Source: Haliotis cracherodii (Eukaryota). Taken from it: a stretch of 64,000 nucleotides of DNA. Where the stretch lies: NCBI RefSeq assembly GCF_022045235.1, contig NW_027266270.1, positions 21,824,001 through 21,888,000 of the forward strand, written 5' to 3'. Under the pieces are notes generated by a model that saw only the letters and a program-made list of their open reading frames with translations, was not told the origin of the DNA and made no database searches. Below, one piece after another: positions 2,300 to 64,000 of the stretch. The position numbers and the translations under genes were made by a program. Position 1 is the stretch's first letter. The number at the start of each line of letters is the position of its first letter.

Positions 2300-2790
2300 T
2301 TTCAAAAAGCATTTTGCAGACTTCATTTATGCGTTGCTCATTTTAGTCGTATCATGTTATTATTTTCTGTTATATAGACTACATATTAGAGATATAATCA
2401 GCTATACATCTGAATATAATTCTGCACAACCTCTCTACGTATATTTTATTTTGTTAATGAATTCGGCCATATGATATTGCTGGTATATGAATAGTCACAT
2501 AAATTCGAAATGTGAGTTGAACATGGTTTCCACTTTCCAGTAAGCGTTAATAACCTTTTCATTAATTATATATCTGAAACCCACTTAATATGATAGCTCA
2601 TGACAATGGACGCCCTGCATTATACAAGGACGACATATGCAGTATAAAGGCAATAAAAGGTATCACACTATATTGGGAATTGCTAGTCATGGACACTGAG
2701 TATGCTGGCAGCGCAAGACACGTGAGATAGCACACTTACGAGTGAGAATGGGCTGTTTTTCTTCACATTCAATTTGGGTGCTCATTTGAA
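2300..2790 (-). mobile_element. Penelope-like RT fragment (diverged second copy of 3730-4165)
   Basis: Colinear similarity to 3730-4165 (tctgcacaacctc..., gtcacat.aattcgaaat, ggcagcgcaa, cattcaa.ttgggt). Confidence 0.6.
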
Positions 2791-3049
2791 TTGTATAACA
2801 TAGCTGAATATCATTCTGGGTTTTGTGTTATGAAATACAGGCATAACAGCGTTCCTTTAATTCCTATAGATTCCTATATTTTTAACTTTCCCAATATTTT
2901 CTATATTGACATTTTATCCCTATACTTGACATATTTTTATGGCACAACTGACTACCTAGGTGCTTTAGATTTTTTTGATTTTTTTTTTGTAGGAGCAAAA
3001 CAAAAAGGTAGTGAAACGTTTCTGTCATTTCTCTGCGCTGAGGTTTAGT

Positions 3050-36300: not shown

Positions 36301-39300
36301 AAATTGAAATTCACTGGATTCTGTTTTACCAGAGCGTTGATTAAGAAGCTGTTGAACTATAAAACTGCAGAAGTCTCATTGGGAATAACACAGGAATTTA
36401 ACACAAGCCCAACTTTTTTCTCCCAAAATCAGAATCAATTCGATAATGAAACATCATGACAGTGCAGGAACCTTAAAGATCAGAACAACATAATCAATTA
36501 ATGATAGTTATATTGTAGGTATATTGTGGCATAAGCGTATGACAACTGCGGTATATGGCTGTGTGGAGAACGACCACATTTGCATGTGTATGTATTGACC
36601 AACATGCAAGGATGTTTCCATGGTTGAGATATTCAGTTGCGCGAAGAACCCGTACCGAACCATCAATACATTTGCTGATACTGCAAGAATTCACAAACAG
36701 AATGCCATTACAGCACAGCATCACTTTACCGTATATCACCTTATCGAAGCCGTATATCTTCCCTTTTCATTTGTTTTGTTTTACGATTAATACGACTACG
36801 AAAGTATTCGCACAAACAACTTTGCCACTATTTCTACGAAATGGAGACCATGAGTGAACCTTGTTTCATTTGCATTTTATTCCAAACATGAACGCCAGAG
36901 AATAATCAGTCTCTAACATCTCCAAAGGAAGAAAAGGGCACAATAATGATGAACAGTACACAAACGGATCATTGACAATTTGTAATGACACCAGATGTTC
37001 GCGAAAGGGCTAAGCATGTCCTGCTCTCGTGCTAGTGAGTGAGTGAGTGAGTTTGGTTTAACGCCGCTTTTAACATTATTTCAGTTATATCACGGCGTGT
37101 CAGCTTAATGTGGGAGGAAAGCCCGAAGTGATACAGGTCTTAGACGTTTACCACTTCGGTGAAACCCACGAGCACGGGTATGGTGCTGACAAACCTAGAA
37201 ACATAATCGGGGCGAACCGGGATTCGAACCCACAATCATAGGTTTCTGGCGTGCTCAAGGGACGCAACTCTGCACAGCGAATCGCGGCGCCTTAGACGAC
37301 TGGGTCACCCGTGCCCCCTCGTGCTAGTGGGTAAGGTGGTTTACAAAACTCCTTGTAAAGGTCATGGCATGGGTTACAATTTGAGACAATTTTGTTGCCT
37401 TTTGAGAAAGAATCTTGGTTAGATTTTAAGATTGCTAAAATGCTGCTAAAAGGGGCGACTCACTCAACCGCGATCCACTCATGAACAAAACAAAAATCCG
37501 GCCAATTTTGACATTACCGGTAATTACATTACAACTTACAAAAATACAACCCATGAAAATCCGGGTTAGAACTGATCGTTCGCAACTCACGCATGTCACA
37601 AGAAGCGACTCAAGAGATCCTTTATGGAAGGAAATATTCAATATATTCTTGAGGGTGTAGTGGCGGCAGCGATTTGTTCATTATGCTCAGCTCAAGACAG
37701 TAATAATGAAGTTTACAAAGTGACTTTGAAAATGATTATGGAAAATTGTAACAAAACAAAAACGGAACGTTAAAGGTCTATATGCCTCTTTTCCTAATGA
37801 TTGGCCTGGTTATCTGTTAGACAGCGTTGTTTTTTTAAGCAAGATAAAAATGAAAGACTGTTGAAAGAACTTTTCACCGCAAAACAAATTAGTTCCATTG
37901 CCATGGCATAACATTCTGTTACGTACGGAAGCCTTTTAGGGCCAATTACTTTTTGTTTTTTTTCGATACTATCTTGAAATGTCAAGAAACTTAGTTGAAA
38001 TTTCAAGATACTATCTTGAAATTTCAAGATTTAGAAGCTGAAATTTCAAGATACAGAAGTTGAAATTTCAAGATATTAAGTTGAAATTTCAAGATAATAA
38101 GTTAACATCCTAAGATGTAAAAATACGTTTGAAGTGAATAATCTTGAAATGTCAAGATCCTACGGAAGCCTTTAAGGGCCATTTCTTAAAAATTCGATAC
38201 TATCTTGAAATTTCAAGCTACTAAGTTGAAATATCAAGAAACTAAGTTGAAATTTCAAGATACTATCTTGAAATTTCAACTTAGTATCTTGAAATTTCAA
38301 GATAGTATCAATCAATCAATCTTTATTGTATGAAAGGCCATTGGCCCATATACACATACAGATAAACAATATTATTTACAGCTGTACAGCGCATTTTATA
38401 ATTATTTGATAACTAATATGATGCTTGACATATAATAAAGGTATCGTAATAACATTGGTAATAACCACAGTGGCAGCAGTAGTAGTAAAAAATACAAAAG
38501 GAATACAAAAGGAATGGAATGGAAATATCAAGTTTTACGTCGCAAAGGCTTTCAGCCATAACGCGACATTCAATAGAAAAGGATCTATCAGGAGGATCTA
38601 TCAGAAATATACTCATCATGTCAGGACAATTTGACAATTTAAATTTATATGCATTTCTAGTAGAAACAAACAGACAAAAATAAAATGTAGATACTCCTGA
38701 TCTAGATGCGAAAGTTTCAAAACAACTTATTATTTCTGGACATATCGGATTTACTAAGTAGTTTACTACGCACTCGTAGACTTTGATAGATGTATTGTAA
38801 TATCTTAGTTAATTTTTTACTAGAGATACCATTAAAAGATAATATTTTGTTCATGGAATAGTGGTTCTTAGTTATGTTAGGCATATATTTCAATCTTAGG
38901 TTGTCGTAAATTGGACATATAAACAAAAAGTGTAATTCGTTTTCAATATGGTTTTCGCAGAATGGACAAAAACGCATATCCTTAGGAATAGAGGAGAAGC
39001 GACCCCTGTTGCACATCAAATCATTTAACCCTAGCCTAAGTTTAATAAATGTGTCTCTAATTTTTCTCTCTGTTATAGTATGCAGGTAAACCTCTGGTGT
39101 TAGACAATATTTAAAGGTTTTATAAACGTCGTAGCGTGTACTGTTATCTAGTGACGACCTCCAATTTTGAGTAAACATTTCAATTGCTACCTGCTTAAAA
39201 GAGCTAAGAAAATACATTTTGTCTCCAACGCTTTGATTAAGCCAAACATATCCAAATCCGTTAGAGAAGAGTAAATGCTTAATGTTTGATGCCCAGGTTA

Positions 39301-42300
39301 CGTAACCAACATTATCACGATAGACAAGCATTTCGTAGCATTTTTGGGGGATTCGTTCCCGCGACATCTCTGTTATTTTTAGCCAGTATCTGAGTAAACG
39401 TAAATATGAACAAATATATAACGGGTATCTGCCACATTCGCCATAGACCATATGATTTGGAGCCGATTTAGAAACATTTAGAAATCTTTTACATGCAGTT
39501 AAGTGTACCTTTTCAATATTGTAATAGGTTTCAAAACCCCAGACCTCTGATCCATATAATAAGATTGGTTGAACTTGAGCATCAAACATTTTGAAGAAGA
39601 TAGTAGGTGAGATAACACGCAATTTATCTAGAACGACAAATAGATTTATTAGGGCCTTTTTTGCTCGTAGCGCGAGATCGTTAATCGAATAATATTAAAA
39701 CAAACAAACGGCCCTAAAAGGCTTCCGTAGTTACGCGATTCTGATTGGTTGTCATAGACTGATATTGAAGACGGTGTTCAATGGGAGCCTCGTGTTGACA
39801 CAATGCGAGGGTGGATTGACAAGTTCTGAGTCTGCATAGAAAGAATTTCGTAATAGTGAAATCTTTTGTAGAGATTACACAAAATCATAGAGATCTATCC
39901 ACAAACACTTGGTCATTTGAGAACATGTTTTCGCTGTGACAAGTTGCTAAAATTTATAGTTGTTATCCATATAGTTATACGTTTTCTTACTTACTTCTAG
40001 AATACCAATCAAACAGTTAAACATACACTCAACTCGAAGATCCAACACATTTACATCAACTTATGTAAAGAAATAATCAAGTGCAATGGTAAACCTCACG
40101 AAACATGTTTATGTATTTGGGTAAGCGCCACTGCTCACTTCTGTTTTATCTGTGCACACAGGTAACCTGGTAAGAAATTAATATATAATCAAGTCAACCC
40201 ATTATATACATTTCAGTCGACGCTCGTTTGTCAACAAACTGTAGAATATTCACGTGTTGTGCAAATAGCTTCTGACAGTCACCATGGTGACAGACTAATA
40301 AGACTCAGTTTCCGGGTCTCGTGTGTGCCTTCATTTTCATGATGCGTGACTGTGTGAGTATGATCCTACGCCGCTACGAAGTATTAACATTATTCCAGCA
40401 ATATCACAGAAATGTGGGCAATCGAATCCGGGCCTCCAGTCTGATAAACACACGTTTTAATCAATAGGCTGACCTACCGACTCCTCGTCAGATAAAGAAG
40501 AAAGACGTAGCCTCGAAACTCTCGAATAGATAAGGGGGTGGAAATATATATCGTGTGGGTTTAGCGTTGAAACAGTGAATTGTCTGAAAAAAGTTAATAT
40601 TCAATTTGTCATGCATATTTCGCAATACGTTTGTACTTCATGTTCTTATAAGTCACGGGGCGGTCGGGTAGCCTAGTGGTTAAAGCGTTGGCTCGTCACG
40701 CCGAAGATCCGGGTTCGATTCCCGACATGGGTACAATGTGTGAAGCCCATTTCTGGTGTCCCCCGCCGTGATATTGCTGGAATATTGCTAAAAGCGGCGT
40801 AAAAACCATACTCACTCACTCACTCACTCTTATAAGTCACAAGTCAAATCTGCAAATCTTACACAGAAAAAACTGTAGCTTTTCCGTCGTTTATACGCAA
40901 ACGGTAGCAACGACATTCATAATATTTTCCATGTTAATTTCTTTTCATTTCATGTGAACCATTCCTTGTCTGGCTACACAGCACAAGCCGAATGTTTGTA
41001 GTCGGTGTTTCGATCATGCTTTATAAACTGACAGCATTATTAATAAGGATTCATTTTGTGAACCAAACAAAACGAGACAGTTTCTTTGCTTGTCATAAAC
41101 AAAACTGAGAACAAAGATCCCTTGTTAACGTGCACTGTCCATACTGATGTGAACTCGCGTAGTACATTAATGATTATTTACCTGATGCCTTCAGAACATG
41201 GTCATGTGGGGAAATCCATATTTCGAAGAGACAGCTGTCTATATGTTACCTGGGTTACATGTCCAAAATATCTGTTATCAATCAAGCAAATATTTACTCT
41301 CTTTTGAACCACTATACTATTTTGTCTTCATGCTATGCACCAACAACGTCAAGTATTGTAACAGCTCAATGCCATCCTGAAGCGAGAATTGTCATTATGT
41401 TAATTAAAGTAAGGTTTCTGAAAGTGGATCCTACCTACGATGGTTTAATCCCTTCACTTTGTAGACACAACGATATCACTTGTGAAATGTATCATTTACT
41501 TCGACTAAGTCTTAAAATATGTAAAAGGCGATTATTATATTTGTTGGTTTGCGTCATTTTTGTTTGTTCTTACAATGTTGGGGGCCTGATAATGATACTT
41601 GTCTTCAATTAAACATGTCGGTGTTCAAACTACTATTTTAACGATAAAATCTTTGAAAATTTTGTTTTCGGTATTGCATGGTATGTAATCCTTTCGTCAA
41701 TGGATTCCATGAACCAAGATGGAATATCAAGCTTGCAGATATTGCAACAATTGTACTCTTTTGTTATATATTTCAAAGCAAGATATTGAAAATGAGTAAT
41801 AATTGCAGTCACTGTTCTCAATTTACTGACCACTAATTTAACATCGTTATAACCGTAGTTCGTTATAAGCATATATAGTCAGGATTCACTGCTAACAATA
41901 AATGGAAGAACAGTTTAATGAATTGTTTTTTGTGATGTCAGTAGAGCGTTCGATAAGGTTTTGCACAAACTTACTTCACACGGCATCAAGGTGAAATTAT
42001 TAAAATGGTTCAGGATCATTTGTAAAACAGAGTTCAGACGGTTACAGTTCTAATGTAACGCCAGTGGCGACCGGAGTACCACAAGGATCAGTATTTGGAC
42101 CTTTATTATTCCTTATTTATATAAATGATGTTGTGGCAGGTATTGACAGTTATATAAGACTTTTTGCAGACAAGTCAATACATGTAATTGTGGAAGATCC
42201 GACCATTGCCTCAAACTACCTAACTAATGACCTAAATAGAATTTCTACTTGGCCGAACAACTGGCAAGTAACATTTAATCCAAACAAGATGGAATCTTTC

Positions 42301-62669: not shown

Positions 62670-62734
62670 GTGAGGTGAAATAGGATTAACGTCGCGTCCA
62701 AGATTATTGCATATAGCGACGTGCATATCCCTTG

Positions 62735-62781
<47 letters not shown>

Positions 62782-63017
62782 GCTGCTTGTACTAGTCCGG
62801 ACTAATGCCGATTTTATAGTGCTAGCCCACAGAGATATCATGCCGCAGTTTAACATGAATACCCCACTCAGACACAGAAAACTGACTCCGAGCCAACCAG
62901 TCCTTGTTTTAGCCCCTTAATGACGAGCTTCAGGCTGGGTAACAACAAGTACCATCGAACCCCGGACCTTCCGCTCTCCGGGCAGAAGCTCTACGAACTA
63001 GACCACGGAGGTGGTCC
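62670..63017 (-). mobile_element. SINE family D with internal (GT)n, nested in a family C 3' remnant
   Basis: TSD acatcaaga(c/t)gac; flanks rejoin as ggctttccccccacatcaag-atgacacgccgtgatata. Confidence 0.85.
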
Positions 63018-63144
63018 ACATCAAGATGACACGCCGTGATATAACTAAAATACTGTTAAACCCACCTCTCTTCATTGTTAGTACTCAATGCAGTTTCTAA
63101 ACTTTCAGAACAAAACTTTTAAACTTTGGTTCCAGAAAGGGTAT

Positions 63145-63615
63145 TACGGAAGCGTAGTAGGGCCACGGTGATTTTGTTTTTGTCTTAGTATCTCCTACGT
63201 AGGACTTACTATCTCCTACTTAGGACTTACTATCTCCTACGTAGGACTTACTATCTCTTACGTAGGACTTACTATCTCCGACGTAGGACTTACTATCTCT
63301 TACGTAGGACTTAGTATGGCCTAGAATCACTATCTCCTACGTTGGACTTAATATATCCTACGAAGGACTTACTATCTCCTTCGTAGGACTTATTATCTCC
63401 TACGTAGGACTTCCTATCTCCTACGTAGGAGATACTAAGTCCTACGTAGAGGATAGGTATTCTAGTCCACACTATGTCCTACGTAGGAGATAGTGATTCT
63501 AGGCCATACTAAGTTCTACGTAGGAGATACTAAGTCCTACGTAGGAGATAGTAAGTCCTACGTAGGAGATACCTAGACAAAACAAAATTCACCGTGGCCC
63601 TACTACGCTTCCGTT
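63145..63615. mobile_element. Non-autonomous TACGG-terminal (IS3EU-like) element: ~27-bp TIR, two opposed arrays of 21-bp units, 6-bp TSD
   Basis: tacggaagcgtagtagggccacggtga ... tcaccgtggccctactacgcttccgtt; TSD gggtat; unit tactatct-cctacgtagg-act, orientation flips at ~63425. Confidence 0.92.
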
Positions 63616-64000
63616 GGGTATAAACAGCAACAGCTTATTTTGTAACGCCATCCGTTGCTTCCTGGTCGTGACAAAACAAATGTTCAACTTATTGTGTTAT
63701 GTACATCTATATAGTTCACCAGTACATCTGTATAGATCATGTTTGCATCGGATGCGGGCTCACTGTTTCCTATGAATTTTCTATGAATGCACTGTCTGAT
63801 ATTTCAAGTTTGAACAATATTATATATCTTCCGAGTCAACAACTATCCTAACAAGAGCAAACAATACCTTCCGTGCAATTGCTACTTGCTATTTGAAAGG
63901 ACTCTTAAGGTCTATGGTATTTGTTACTGATGAATATGCATCGCGGGTGATGTATTGAAAAACACACTTTCACATCCACGTACATTGAAAATAAACACCG

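What the first reader, a model, noticed from the sequence alone, without database searches (positions are those of the whole stretch)
63145..63615. Cassette-like 21-bp arrays: same scaffold, swapped 10-bp palindrome, in two TACGG elements
Seen: the elements at 63145-63615 and 37924-39729 share termini TACGGAAGC-N5-AGGGCC (N5 = gtagt vs ctttt, mirrored at both ends), 6-bp TSDs, a T-rich spacer, and opposed arrays of a 21-bp unit TA(C/G)TATCT-[X]-ACT. X is a perfect 10-bp palindrome that differs almost completely: CCTACGTAGG vs TGAAATTTCA. Known: TAYGG ends with 6-bp TSD typify IS3EU transposons, and 21 bp is two helical turns. Inference: phased transposase-binding scaffolds whose palindromic core and TIR spacer are replaced and then homogenised across all units and both arms. 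This could be a specificity code, or an undescribed array-rewriting mechanism that lets subfamilies escape silencing.
Basis: partly seen in the sequence, partly recalled or inferred. Interest (0 to 1): 0.75.

Follow-up and report, generated by a model that had tools for sequence, protein, structure and literature searches.

The report
IS3EU-type transposons with swapped palindrome arrays
Two small non-coding jumping genes carry rows of 21-base repeats with a shared 9-base spacer and a family-specific 12-base palindrome, and longer relatives with the same rows encode their own cutting enzyme, so the rows are probably its family-specific docking sites.

Summary
TACGGAAGC-N5-AGGGCC occurs 882 times in this 1.18-Gb genome, against 1 for the reversed control. 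Elements carry 6-bp target duplications and 21-bp arrays.

The unit is a conserved 9-bp spacer, CTTA(N)TATC, plus a 12-bp palindrome T-N10-A. With this spacer I found four discrete palindromes:
- A: TCCTACGTAGGA
- B: TTGAAATTTCAA
- C: TGGAAATTTCCA
- D: TCGTGGCCACGA

A and B cores were never adjacent (0 places, against 714 A-A and 1223 B-B).

Every class also has longer copies. There the array sits between the terminus and a decayed integrase-type (Pfam rva_4) transposase gene with an HTH-like N-terminus. Termini (TAYGG..CCRTA), the 6-bp duplication and the enzyme type fit the IS3EU superfamily. The window elements are its non-autonomous derivatives.

Palindrome distance tracks transposase distance. 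B and C share 58% protein identity and differ by one symmetric step. The other pairs share 39-45% and differ at 6-8 of 12 bases.

This favours lineage-specific transposase docking sites evolving stepwise. That is inferred, not shown. It does not favour a special array-rewriting mechanism.

The parts
63139..63144 (.). left 6-bp target-site duplication GGGTAT of element 1
63145..63164 (+). left terminal inverted repeat TACGGAAGC-GTAGT-AGGGCC (family A)
   Evidence: 0 mismatches
63165..63192 (+). T-rich linker that ends in the first spacer (..CTTAGTATC)
63193..63430 (+). left arm: 11 units of spacer CTTA(N)TATC plus core TCCTACGTAGGA. One unit has a 25-bp spacer variant. The spacer orientation flips at the core at 63419-63430.
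63431..63567 (-). right arm: 5 units in the opposite orientation (GATA(N)TAAG spacers), two of them with 25-bp spacer variants
63568..63595 (-). right linker, the mirror of the left linker
63596..63615 (-). right terminal inverted repeat, 1 mismatch at the outermost base
63616..63621 (.). right 6-bp target-site duplication GGGTAT
37918..37923 (.). left 6-bp target-site duplication GTTACG of element 2
37924..37943 (+). left terminal inverted repeat TACGGAAGC-CTTTT-AGGGCC (family B)
37974..38092 (+). family B array: 6 units of core TTGAAATTTCAA with GATA(N)TAAG-type spacers (21 or 22 bp)
38093..38160 (+). non-repeat centre also seen in other family B copies (L025, L030), followed by one more core
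38161..38180 (+). second, nested family B left terminus (N5 CTTTA)
38205..38300 (+). array of the nested copy: 5 units, with the spacer orientation flipping at the last cores
38307..39660 (-). unrelated insert. It holds an (ATCA)n run at 38307-38321 and a 301-aa ORF at 38717-39622 on the minus strand with no Pfam match. That it is a truncated non-LTR retrotransposon is my inference only.
39710..39729 (-). right terminal inverted repeat of element 2 (N5 CTTTT)
39730..39735 (.). right 6-bp target-site duplication GTTACG

Best explanation
What it is. The element at 63145-63615 is a 471-bp non-autonomous, foldback-like derivative (MITE) of an IS3EU-type DNA transposon, here called family A. The element at 37924-39729 is a disrupted family B relative.

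Shared anatomy. At least four related lineages (A-D) share one end architecture:
- a TAYGG terminus with conserved outer and inner blocks;
- an unconserved A/T-rich linker;
- an array of 21-bp units, each a conserved 9-bp spacer CTTA(N)TATC plus a lineage-specific 12-bp palindrome.
In longer copies, about 60-120 bp after the array, an integrase-type transposase gene begins. Its N-terminus is predicted to be a three-helix, HTH-like domain.

Proposed mechanism (inferred). The arrays are multi-copy subterminal docking sites for the transposase. Each palindrome is read by a dimer of the lineage's own N-terminal DNA-binding domain. The terminus blocks and the spacer are read by, or constrained by, parts common to all lineages. 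The 21-bp period, two helical turns, puts the bound dimers on one face of the DNA.

Evolution. The lineages diverged stepwise. A changed half-site and its mirror spread through the arrays of a master copy by ordinary concerted evolution, under selection for binding. Non-autonomous copies keep only the termini and arrays. Because each palindrome is its own inverted repeat, recombination between two cores can flip the spacers in between. That would explain the foldback form and the opposite spacer orientation in different lineages.

Shown versus inferred. The anatomy, the copy numbers, the TSDs, the link of each core class to its own transposase lineage and the scaling of core distance with protein distance are shown. 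Binding, dimer read-out, specificity and the flip mechanism are inferred.
For: - Termini: 882 exact terminus matches in the genome against 1 in the reversed control.
- TSDs: 6-bp TSDs in 32 of 44 paired elements at 1 mismatch or fewer, against 1 of 44 in the control.
- Period 21 dominates in all four classes. Neighbouring cores exactly 21 bp apart number 99 (A), 115 (B), 15 (C) and 37 (D), and the top spacers are CTTACTATC, CTTAGTATC and CTTATTATC or their complements in every class.
- Core classes are discrete. Searches on the spacer scaffold that exclude the known cores returned only class D and mutated A/B units.
- Arrays are never chimeric: 0 A-B neighbours against 714 A-A and 1223 B-B places. 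None of the 71 sampled termini was mixed.
- Coding partners exist for each class. For D, L076, L077 and L079 include a 7.2-kb copy with both ends, arrays at both ends and the TSD GTTGAG. For C: L080-L082 and L087. For B: L084 and L089. For A: L088.
- Pfam rva_4 integrase core was hit at E 2.5e-17 (D), 1e-15 (B) and 2.6e-22 (C).
- A conserved N-terminal motif is aligned in A1. It is modelled as three helices with pLDDT 81-86 over residues 11-40. It aligns to winged-helix/HTH DNA-binding domains, including the arginine repressor and several transposases, at Z 5-6.6.
- Protein identity is 58% for B-C and 39-45% for all other pairs. B and C cores differ by one symmetric step and share N5.
- Between lineages the linker next to the array is unalignable, whereas the spacer keeps 8 of 9 bases.
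- Some B MITEs (L015, L056) keep the first 20 bp or so of internal sequence that follows the array in the coding B copies.
- The 25-bp spacer variant of family A arrays is also present in the coding A copy L088.
Against: - No binding data exist, and nothing here shows which protein, if any, touches the arrays.
- Every transposase copy I could read is decayed or truncated. All three D copies share an in-frame stop in the N-terminal region. The C copies carry a HECT fragment or deletions. The A copy has internal tandem duplications.
- The HTH call is weak. Foldseek gave no match at E 0.001 or better, and the VIA Z of 6.6 is below the tool's own caution line of about 8.
- If the conserved spacer were read in a fixed direction relative to the terminus, its flip between lineages would be hard to explain. 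A and C read CTTA.. inward, while B and D read GATA.. inward.
- The more distant lineages keep the 21-bp period without a clean palindrome. F has no palindrome in its unit, G only a partial one, and E has a mismatched centre.
- Only 71 of the 882 exact termini were read. They came from the first 30 places listed, all on contig C1, plus 30 of the 34 rare-N5 places and the window.
Confidence: 0.6

Rival explanations
1. The arrays are neutral, satellite-like expansions inside transposon ends with no binding role. Palindromes arise and stay perfect through replication template switching at quasi-palindromes. The shared spacer only reflects common descent.
For: - Array length varies widely between copies. 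Paired elements measure 121-1174 bp, and D arrays run from about 10 to about 38 units.
- D arrays show a 42-bp higher-order alternation typical of satellite dynamics.
- Lineage F has a 21-bp unit without a palindrome.
Against: - The linker beside the arrays has diverged beyond alignment between lineages, while the spacer keeps 8 of 9 bases and the period stays at 21.
- Arrays sit at both ends, next to the terminus, in every lineage, including coding copies.
- Dispersed copies show no excess of palindrome-restoring double changes: observed 2, 0, 0 and 1 against expected 0.79, 0.97, 0.15 and 0.70. Palindromy is therefore not maintained in place by a repair process.
Confidence: 0.12
2. A dedicated rewriting or cassette-exchange process replaces the palindromic core, and N5, in all units and both arms at once. 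It creates new subfamilies that escape silencing.
For: - A, B and D cores differ at 6-8 of 12 positions on an unchanged spacer, with no intermediates between them in this genome.
- Arrays are never chimeric.
Against: - Close lineages differ by single steps. B to C is one symmetric step; B to E is one central base; and a variant of A (TTCTACGTAGAA) is one symmetric step away.
- Core distance scales with transposase distance, as expected for slow co-divergence.
- N5 CTTTT occurs with two different cores.
- No donor cassette or partially rewritten array was seen.
- Tandem arrays are homogenised by well-known unequal exchange and conversion (general knowledge).
Confidence: 0.06
3. The conserved spacer and terminus are the transposase sites. 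The palindromes are bound by something else, such as host dimeric transcription factors or chromatin proteins, or they serve as regulatory or insulating modules that each lineage picked up.
For: - The spacer, not the palindrome, is the part conserved across lineages whose enzymes are only 39-58% identical.
- The cores resemble common dimeric factor sites: GAAnnTTC in B and C, and an ACGT centre in A. This resemblance is recalled, not tested.
Against: - Each palindrome class is tied to one transposase lineage, and B and C differ both in the predicted recognition helix (ISNRT versus ISERT) and in one half-site base.
- A host factor gives no reason for classes to stay unmixed within arrays.
- The spacer direction flips relative to the terminus, which is odd for an oriented transposase site.
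Confidence: 0.15

Closest known systems
[quoted passage not shown]
   Same: - TA..TA termini and 6-bp TSDs match (PMC10045372 passages). So does the TAYGG..CCRTA form of the termini reported for fungal families (PMC12730594 section 3.1.3 passage).
- The transposase is integrase-related (Pfam rva_4/rve; weak IS481 match at E 0.0012).
- Gene fragments are captured, as reported for GingerRoot (PMC6839031 passages). Here it is a HECT fragment.
   Different: - The GingerRoot paper's main text has 0 occurrences of 'subterminal', 'tandem repeat' or 'palindrom', and no held paper contains both 'IS3EU' and 'subterminal'. I therefore found no description of phased 21-bp arrays with lineage-specific palindromes.
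- Repbase entries and paper supplements could not be seen.
Lemi1 / Emigrant (pogo-like transposon and its MITE, Arabidopsis)
   Same: [quoted passage not shown] The authors argue that this limits mobilisation by distant transposases (abstract of PMC1636448). This is the functional model proposed here.
   Different: - The superfamily differs (Tc1/mariner-pogo).
- No phased palindrome-plus-spacer unit is mentioned in the abstract.
- Binding is measured there and only inferred here.
piggyBac / piggyBat transposon ends
   Same: The read-out is two-part. One motif is bound mainly by the transposase core, and a 19-bp palindrome is bound by two C-terminal domains, one from each monomer of the dimer. 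The authors note that many uncharacterised transposons have arrays of subterminal repeats (PMC11707139 passages).
   Different: - The enzyme family differs and the TSD is TTAA.
- There are a few sites per end, not arrays of 5-38 phased units.
- Subterminal sites there can be inhibitory, a possibility not excluded here.
Drosophila Foldback elements and CACTA (En/Spm) subterminal 12-bp motifs (recalled, no call)
   Same: They have long inverted arms built of short tandem repeats (Foldback), and repeated short subterminal motifs in both orientations bound by an element-encoded protein (En/Spm TnpA).
   Different: The termini, TSD lengths and transposase families are different. The resemblance is in architecture only and was not tested here.

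Membership tests
IS3EU superfamily | Termini 5'-TA..TA-3', in described families TAYGG..CCRTA | tested here: met
   TACGG..CCGTA at both window elements and 882 times genome-wide. Definition taken from PMC10045372 and PMC12730594, passages read.
IS3EU superfamily | 6-bp target-site duplication | tested here: met
   18 of 44 paired elements have a perfect TSD and 14 of 44 have one mismatch. The control hexamers one step further out gave 0 of 44 perfect. The D copy L079 has GTTGAG on both sides.
IS3EU superfamily | Autonomous members encode a DDE transposase of the integrase / IS3-IS481 type | tested here: met
   Pfam rva_4 and rve matches in ORFs directly downstream of the arrays in the B, C and D copies. 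The A copy aligns to them by blastp. The IS481 model matches weakly, below its cutoff. The two window elements themselves encode no transposase.
IS3EU superfamily | No HHCC zinc motif upstream of the catalytic core | tested here: inconclusive
   The N-terminal 95 residues align without a conserved His/Cys pattern and model as helices. All copies read are decayed, however.
IS3EU superfamily | Transposase groups with reference IS3EU/GingerRoot sequences in a tree | not testable with these tools
MITE (non-autonomous derivative of a DNA transposon) | Short, non-coding, TIRs and TSD, many copies, termini shared with a coding element | tested here: met
   Element 1 is 471 bp. Paired copies measure 121-1174 bp. 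The termini and arrays match the coding copies L088 (A) and L089 (B).
Drosophila-type Foldback elements | Same superfamily and TSD as FB elements | not tested
   Only the inverted arms of tandem repeats are alike. The termini, the 6-bp TSD and the linked transposase point to IS3EU instead.

The most novel reading that the evidence does not exclude
IS3EU-type transposons use a two-part address at their ends. One part is a conserved terminus and 9-bp spacer common to all lineages. The other is a 12-bp palindrome read by a dimer of the lineage's own N-terminal helix-turn-helix domain, repeated every two helical turns. Changing the palindrome together with the recognition helix splits one transposon into lineages that no longer mobilise each other or each other's MITEs. 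This lets at least four lineages coexist in one genome. The palindromes also act as built-in inversion points that create foldback MITEs. If so, this would be the first cis-element model for this little-studied superfamily, and a natural set of matched protein-site pairs.
Probability: 0.4. Interest if true: 0.6.

Novelty: new variant of a known kind. Interest (0 to 1): 0.5.

Why it matters
[quoted passage not shown] This genome offers four co-resident lineages with the same end scaffold, different palindromes and their own transposase remnants. That gives a ready-made comparison for asking how a DNA transposase recognises its own ends, and how new, mutually exclusive transposon lineages and their MITE swarms arise. 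The palindrome and recognition-helix pairs, such as B and C with one half-site base and one helix residue different, make the question directly testable by binding assays. For genome annotation, the 21-bp arrays explain a class of dispersed short 'satellites' as transposon ends.

Tried and rejected
- Chance. Rejected by shuffles and by reversed-pattern controls.
- More core classes on the same spacer. Three exclusion patterns found only class D and mutated A/B units. In one search the control (10) exceeded the hits (2).
- A link between N5 and the core sequence. A shares the 5-mer CGTAG between its TIR and its core. By my rough estimate such a 5-mer match would arise by chance about one time in four, and B and D show nothing similar. 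I dropped the idea.
- NCBIfam gave only a sub-threshold IS481 match.
- The N-terminal 93 residues of B gave no Pfam family.
- Foldseek gave nothing significant. VIA-align gave only middling Z.
- The 301-aa ORF inside element 2 has no Pfam match, so 'LINE fragment' remains my inference.
- ARAGORN found no tRNA in the high-copy repeat upstream of element 1.
- Earlier scan notes held nothing on these arrays.
- The paper 10.1266/ggs.18-00024 is not held.
- Supplements of PMC6839031 and PMC12730594, which may list TIR details, are closed and were not seen.

Full report
OBSERVATION. The pattern TACGGAAGC-N5-AGGGCC matches at 37924, 38161, 39710-39729(-) and 63145. At 63596-63615(-) it matches with one mismatch at the outermost base. 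That is five matches where shuffles give 0.02. The flanking hexamers are GGGTAT/GGGTAT and GTTACG/GTTACG. Tandem Repeats Finder reports period 21 in both elements.

A unit-by-unit parse gives 16 cores in element 1. Seven are exact TCCTACGTAGGA, eight have one mismatch and one has two. Eleven units read CTTA(N)TATC-core. The orientation flips at the core at 63419-63430, and five units follow in the opposite sense.

Element 2 has 12 real cores, 8 of them exact TTGAAATTTCAA. It is a composite: a second left terminus is nested at 38161, and a 1.3-kb unrelated insert follows. The insert holds a 301-aa minus-strand ORF with no Pfam match.

The symmetric part of each unit is 12 bp (T-N10-A).

GENOME-WIDE PICTURE. 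The window lies in a 1.18-Gb assembly of 80 contigs. The terminus pattern occurs 882 times (434 + 448), against 1 for the reversed control.

I read 71 distinct termini with 320 bp of inward sequence. They came from the first 30 listed places (all on contig C1), 30 of the 34 places with rarer N5, and the window.
- All 20 termini with G-type N5 (GTAGT and point variants) carried a repeated palindromic 12-mer. It was TCCTACGTAGGA in 18 and its symmetric variant TTCTACGTAGAA in 2.
- Of the 41 termini with CT-, CA-, CG-, TT- or CCTTT-type N5, 28 carried repeated TTGAAATTTCAA and 13 had no palindromic 12-mer repeated twice or more.
- None of the 10 termini with CCA-type N5 carried a repeated palindromic 12-mer.
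- No terminus mixed core types.

Across the genome, perfect A-A neighbours at 21 bp occur at 714 places, B-B at 1223 and A-B at 0.

Of 44 paired elements, 18 have perfect 6-bp duplications and 14 have one mismatch. The next hexamers outward gave 0 perfect and 1 with one mismatch or fewer. Some pairs in that table are mis-paired nested copies and were not removed.

THE UNIT. Anchoring on cores, the centre-to-centre distance is 21 bp for 99 (A), 115 (B), 15 (C) and 37 (D) neighbour pairs. Minor classes sit at 22, 37 and 42 bp. The 9-mers between cores are CTTACTATC, CTTAGTATC or CTTATTATC, or their complements, in every class.

Searching the genome for spacer-N12-spacer while excluding the A and B centres uncovered a fourth perfect palindrome, TCGTGGCCACGA (class D, 13 of 15 hits, control 2). 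Two further exclusion patterns returned only mutated A or B units. Class C (TGGAAATTTCCA) appeared in L002 and in several longer copies.

A fifth MITE family, E (N5 CCATT and variants), has the unit TTGAAAATTCAA-GTTCTTATC. Its core fails palindromy at the centre, and its spacer matches at 6 of 9 bases.

CODING PARTNERS. Class D arrays led to long copies.
- L079 has both termini (TACGGAACCGTAGAGGGGAC), 7.2 kb apart, with arrays at both ends in mirror orientation and the TSD GTTGAG.
- L076 is about 8 kb, with about 21 and about 38 units.
- Downstream of the left array, L077 has a 216-aa ORF that matches Pfam rva_4 (integrase core, E 2.5e-17) and rve.

Searching the genome with that protein gave 31 matches. 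I fetched the upstream flanks of 13 of them. Four had class C ends when L080 is included (L080, L081, L082, L087). Two had class B arrays (L089 with its terminus, L084 without). One had a class A end (L088).

Others belong to more distant lineages. F (L083, L086, L092) has the terminus TACGGTGGCCCATAAGGGAC and a non-palindromic 21-bp unit. G (L093) has the terminus TATGCAAAAGCCTATTAGGGCC and a 21-bp unit with a partial palindrome. Three flanks (L085, L090, L091) showed nothing recognisable.

ORFs of B and C also match rva_4, at E 1e-15 and 2.6e-22. NCBIfam's IS481 model matches only weakly, at E 0.0012 and far below its cutoff.

All copies read are damaged. The three D copies share an in-frame stop. 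The C copies carry deletions or a HECT-domain fragment (PF00632, E 9e-11). The A copy has internal tandem duplications.

WHAT FAMILY. Published definitions fit. IS3EU families have TA..TA termini and usually 6-bp TSDs, and group with GingerRoot (PMC10045372, passages). Fungal IS3EU elements 'end with TAYGG..CCRTA' and make 6-bp TSDs (PMC12730594, section 3.1.3 passage). GingerRoot has TA..TA termini, mostly 6-bp TSDs and captured gene fragments (PMC6839031, passages). Placement in a tree with reference transposases could not be done.

HOW IT PROBABLY WORKS. The N-terminal 95 residues align across A, B, C, D and G. They share the motif Y..LGL...EIL.FLA..HG..IS.RTLKR.L.

The model (mean pLDDT 73; 81-86 over residues 11-40) has three helices in residues 2-47. 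Foldseek found nothing at E 0.001 or better. VIA-align placed residues 1-56 on winged-helix/HTH DNA-binding domains: arginine repressor (Z 6.6, rmsd 1.7, 52 aligned), AhrC, PadR, and the DNA-binding domains of Mos1, SETMAR, ISCth4, Tc3 and Mu transposases (Z 4.8-5.4). This is below the tool's caution line. I treat the HTH call as likely, not shown.

Protein identity over 160-230 aligned columns is 58% for B-C and 39-45% for A-B, A-C, A-D, B-D and C-D. B and C share N5 and differ by one mirrored base in the core. They also differ in the first residues of the predicted recognition helix (ISNRT versus ISERT). The more distant pairs differ at 6-8 of 12 core bases.

The linker between terminus and array is unalignable between lineages, yet the spacer keeps 8 of 9 bases. 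This pattern suggests that the spacer and terminus are constrained in all lineages, and that the palindrome is the lineage-specific part.

I therefore favour arrays of transposase docking sites with the palindrome read by a dimer. This is the same logic as two published cases. Lemi1 proteins bind cooperatively to Emigrant subterminal motifs (PMC1636448, abstract). In piggyBac, a core-bound motif sits beside a 19-bp palindrome held by two C-terminal domains (PMC11707139, passages).

AGAINST A SPECIAL REWRITING MECHANISM. Close lineages are one step apart. In dispersed copies only about half of the A and B units are exact:
- A: 91 of 188
- B: 102 of 188
- C: 12 of 27
- D: 11 of 84

The variants are ordinary asymmetric changes. 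Palindrome-preserving double changes are no commoner than chance: 2, 0, 0 and 1 observed against 0.79, 0.97, 0.15 and 0.70 expected. Palindromy and uniformity thus belong to the founding copies, not to a process acting on every copy.

AN UNEXPLAINED POINT. Read inward from the terminus, the spacer is CTTA..TATC in A and C but GATA..TAAG in B and D. The orientation has therefore flipped at least twice. Each palindrome is both a direct and an inverted repeat of every other one, so exchange between two cores would invert whatever lies between them. That would also make the foldback MITEs. This is my inference and is untested. It sits awkwardly with any oriented read-out of the spacer.

AGE OF ELEMENT 1. 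I laid contigs of four runs on 62700-64000. The runs are one of the same organism label (X2) and three of other labels (X10, X11, X12).
- In X10, one contig bridges the left junction (62965-63212).
- At the right junction, contigs of X2 and X12 reach 31 bases into the terminus. Those of X10 and X11 reach 27 bases, short of the tool's 31-base rule.
- The flanks differ from the window by 17-20 letters in about 412 bases in the three other organisms, and by 3 in X2.

The insertion therefore looks old and shared. No empty-site joint was among the rows shown, and 623 joint rows were not shown. Depth over the arrays is high in all four runs, so family A exists in the relatives too.

LITERATURE ON NOVELTY. 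'IS3EU' occurs in 62 held papers, of which 20 were listed. 'IS3EU' together with 'subterminal' occurs in none. The GingerRoot paper has no occurrence of 'subterminal', 'tandem repeat' or 'palindrom'. [quoted passage not shown] Repbase Reports and paper supplements were not visible, so the architecture may be recorded there.

VERDICT. The elements are new members of a known superfamily. Their end architecture, a conserved spacer with a lineage-specific palindrome in 21-bp phase, was not described in any paper I could search. The 'specificity code' reading is the best supported and remains unproven. The 'rewriting mechanism' is not needed.

Noticed in passing
L094:285-650 (minus strand); also L080 about 2659-2934 (minus strand): Class C transposon copies carry a HECT ubiquitin-ligase C-terminal fragment (PF00632, E 9e-11) just after, or fused to, the decayed transposase ORF. 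It looks like a captured host gene fragment.
   Followed up: partly
window 62790-63095: A very high-copy repeat lies directly upstream of element 1. Summed contig depth is 10^5-10^7, against about 20-30 for the unique flank, in all four runs. Similar sequence interrupts the MITEs in L058 and L071. ARAGORN finds no tRNA. It is probably a SINE, which is my inference.
   Followed up: partly
L076, L077, L079 (class D copies): All three copies share the same in-frame stop codon in the N-terminal coding region. The D family seems to have spread from an already defective master, presumably mobilised in trans.
   Followed up: no
L088 about 900-1885: The class A coding copy has its N-terminal coding region tandemly duplicated several times. 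The peptide ..RSLKRMNLYRRGKYSHIVDIALTCLAHVNGIIVSKRE.. is repeated, forming a coding minisatellite.
   Followed up: no
L076 7810-8600: Class D arrays alternate two core variants (..GGCCACGA and ..GGCCTCGA) in a 42-bp higher-order repeat. Only 11 of 84 D units are exact palindromes.
   Followed up: no
L083 1310-1420, L086 1400-1510: Lineage F has an 18-bp perfect palindrome, TTTCCACCGCGGTGGAAA, inside a larger inverted repeat. It lies between its 21-bp array and the transposase start.
   Followed up: no
L080 972-1974: A class C copy is interrupted by an insert with ORFs that look like a Tc1/mariner-type transposase. I judged this by eye and did not run them against Pfam.
   Followed up: no
window 63298-63335, 63440-63514 and many family A loci: A recurrent 37-bp unit variant has a spacer of 25 bp (CTTAGTATGGCCTAGAATCACTATC and relatives). 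It is also present in the coding A copy L088.
   Followed up: partly
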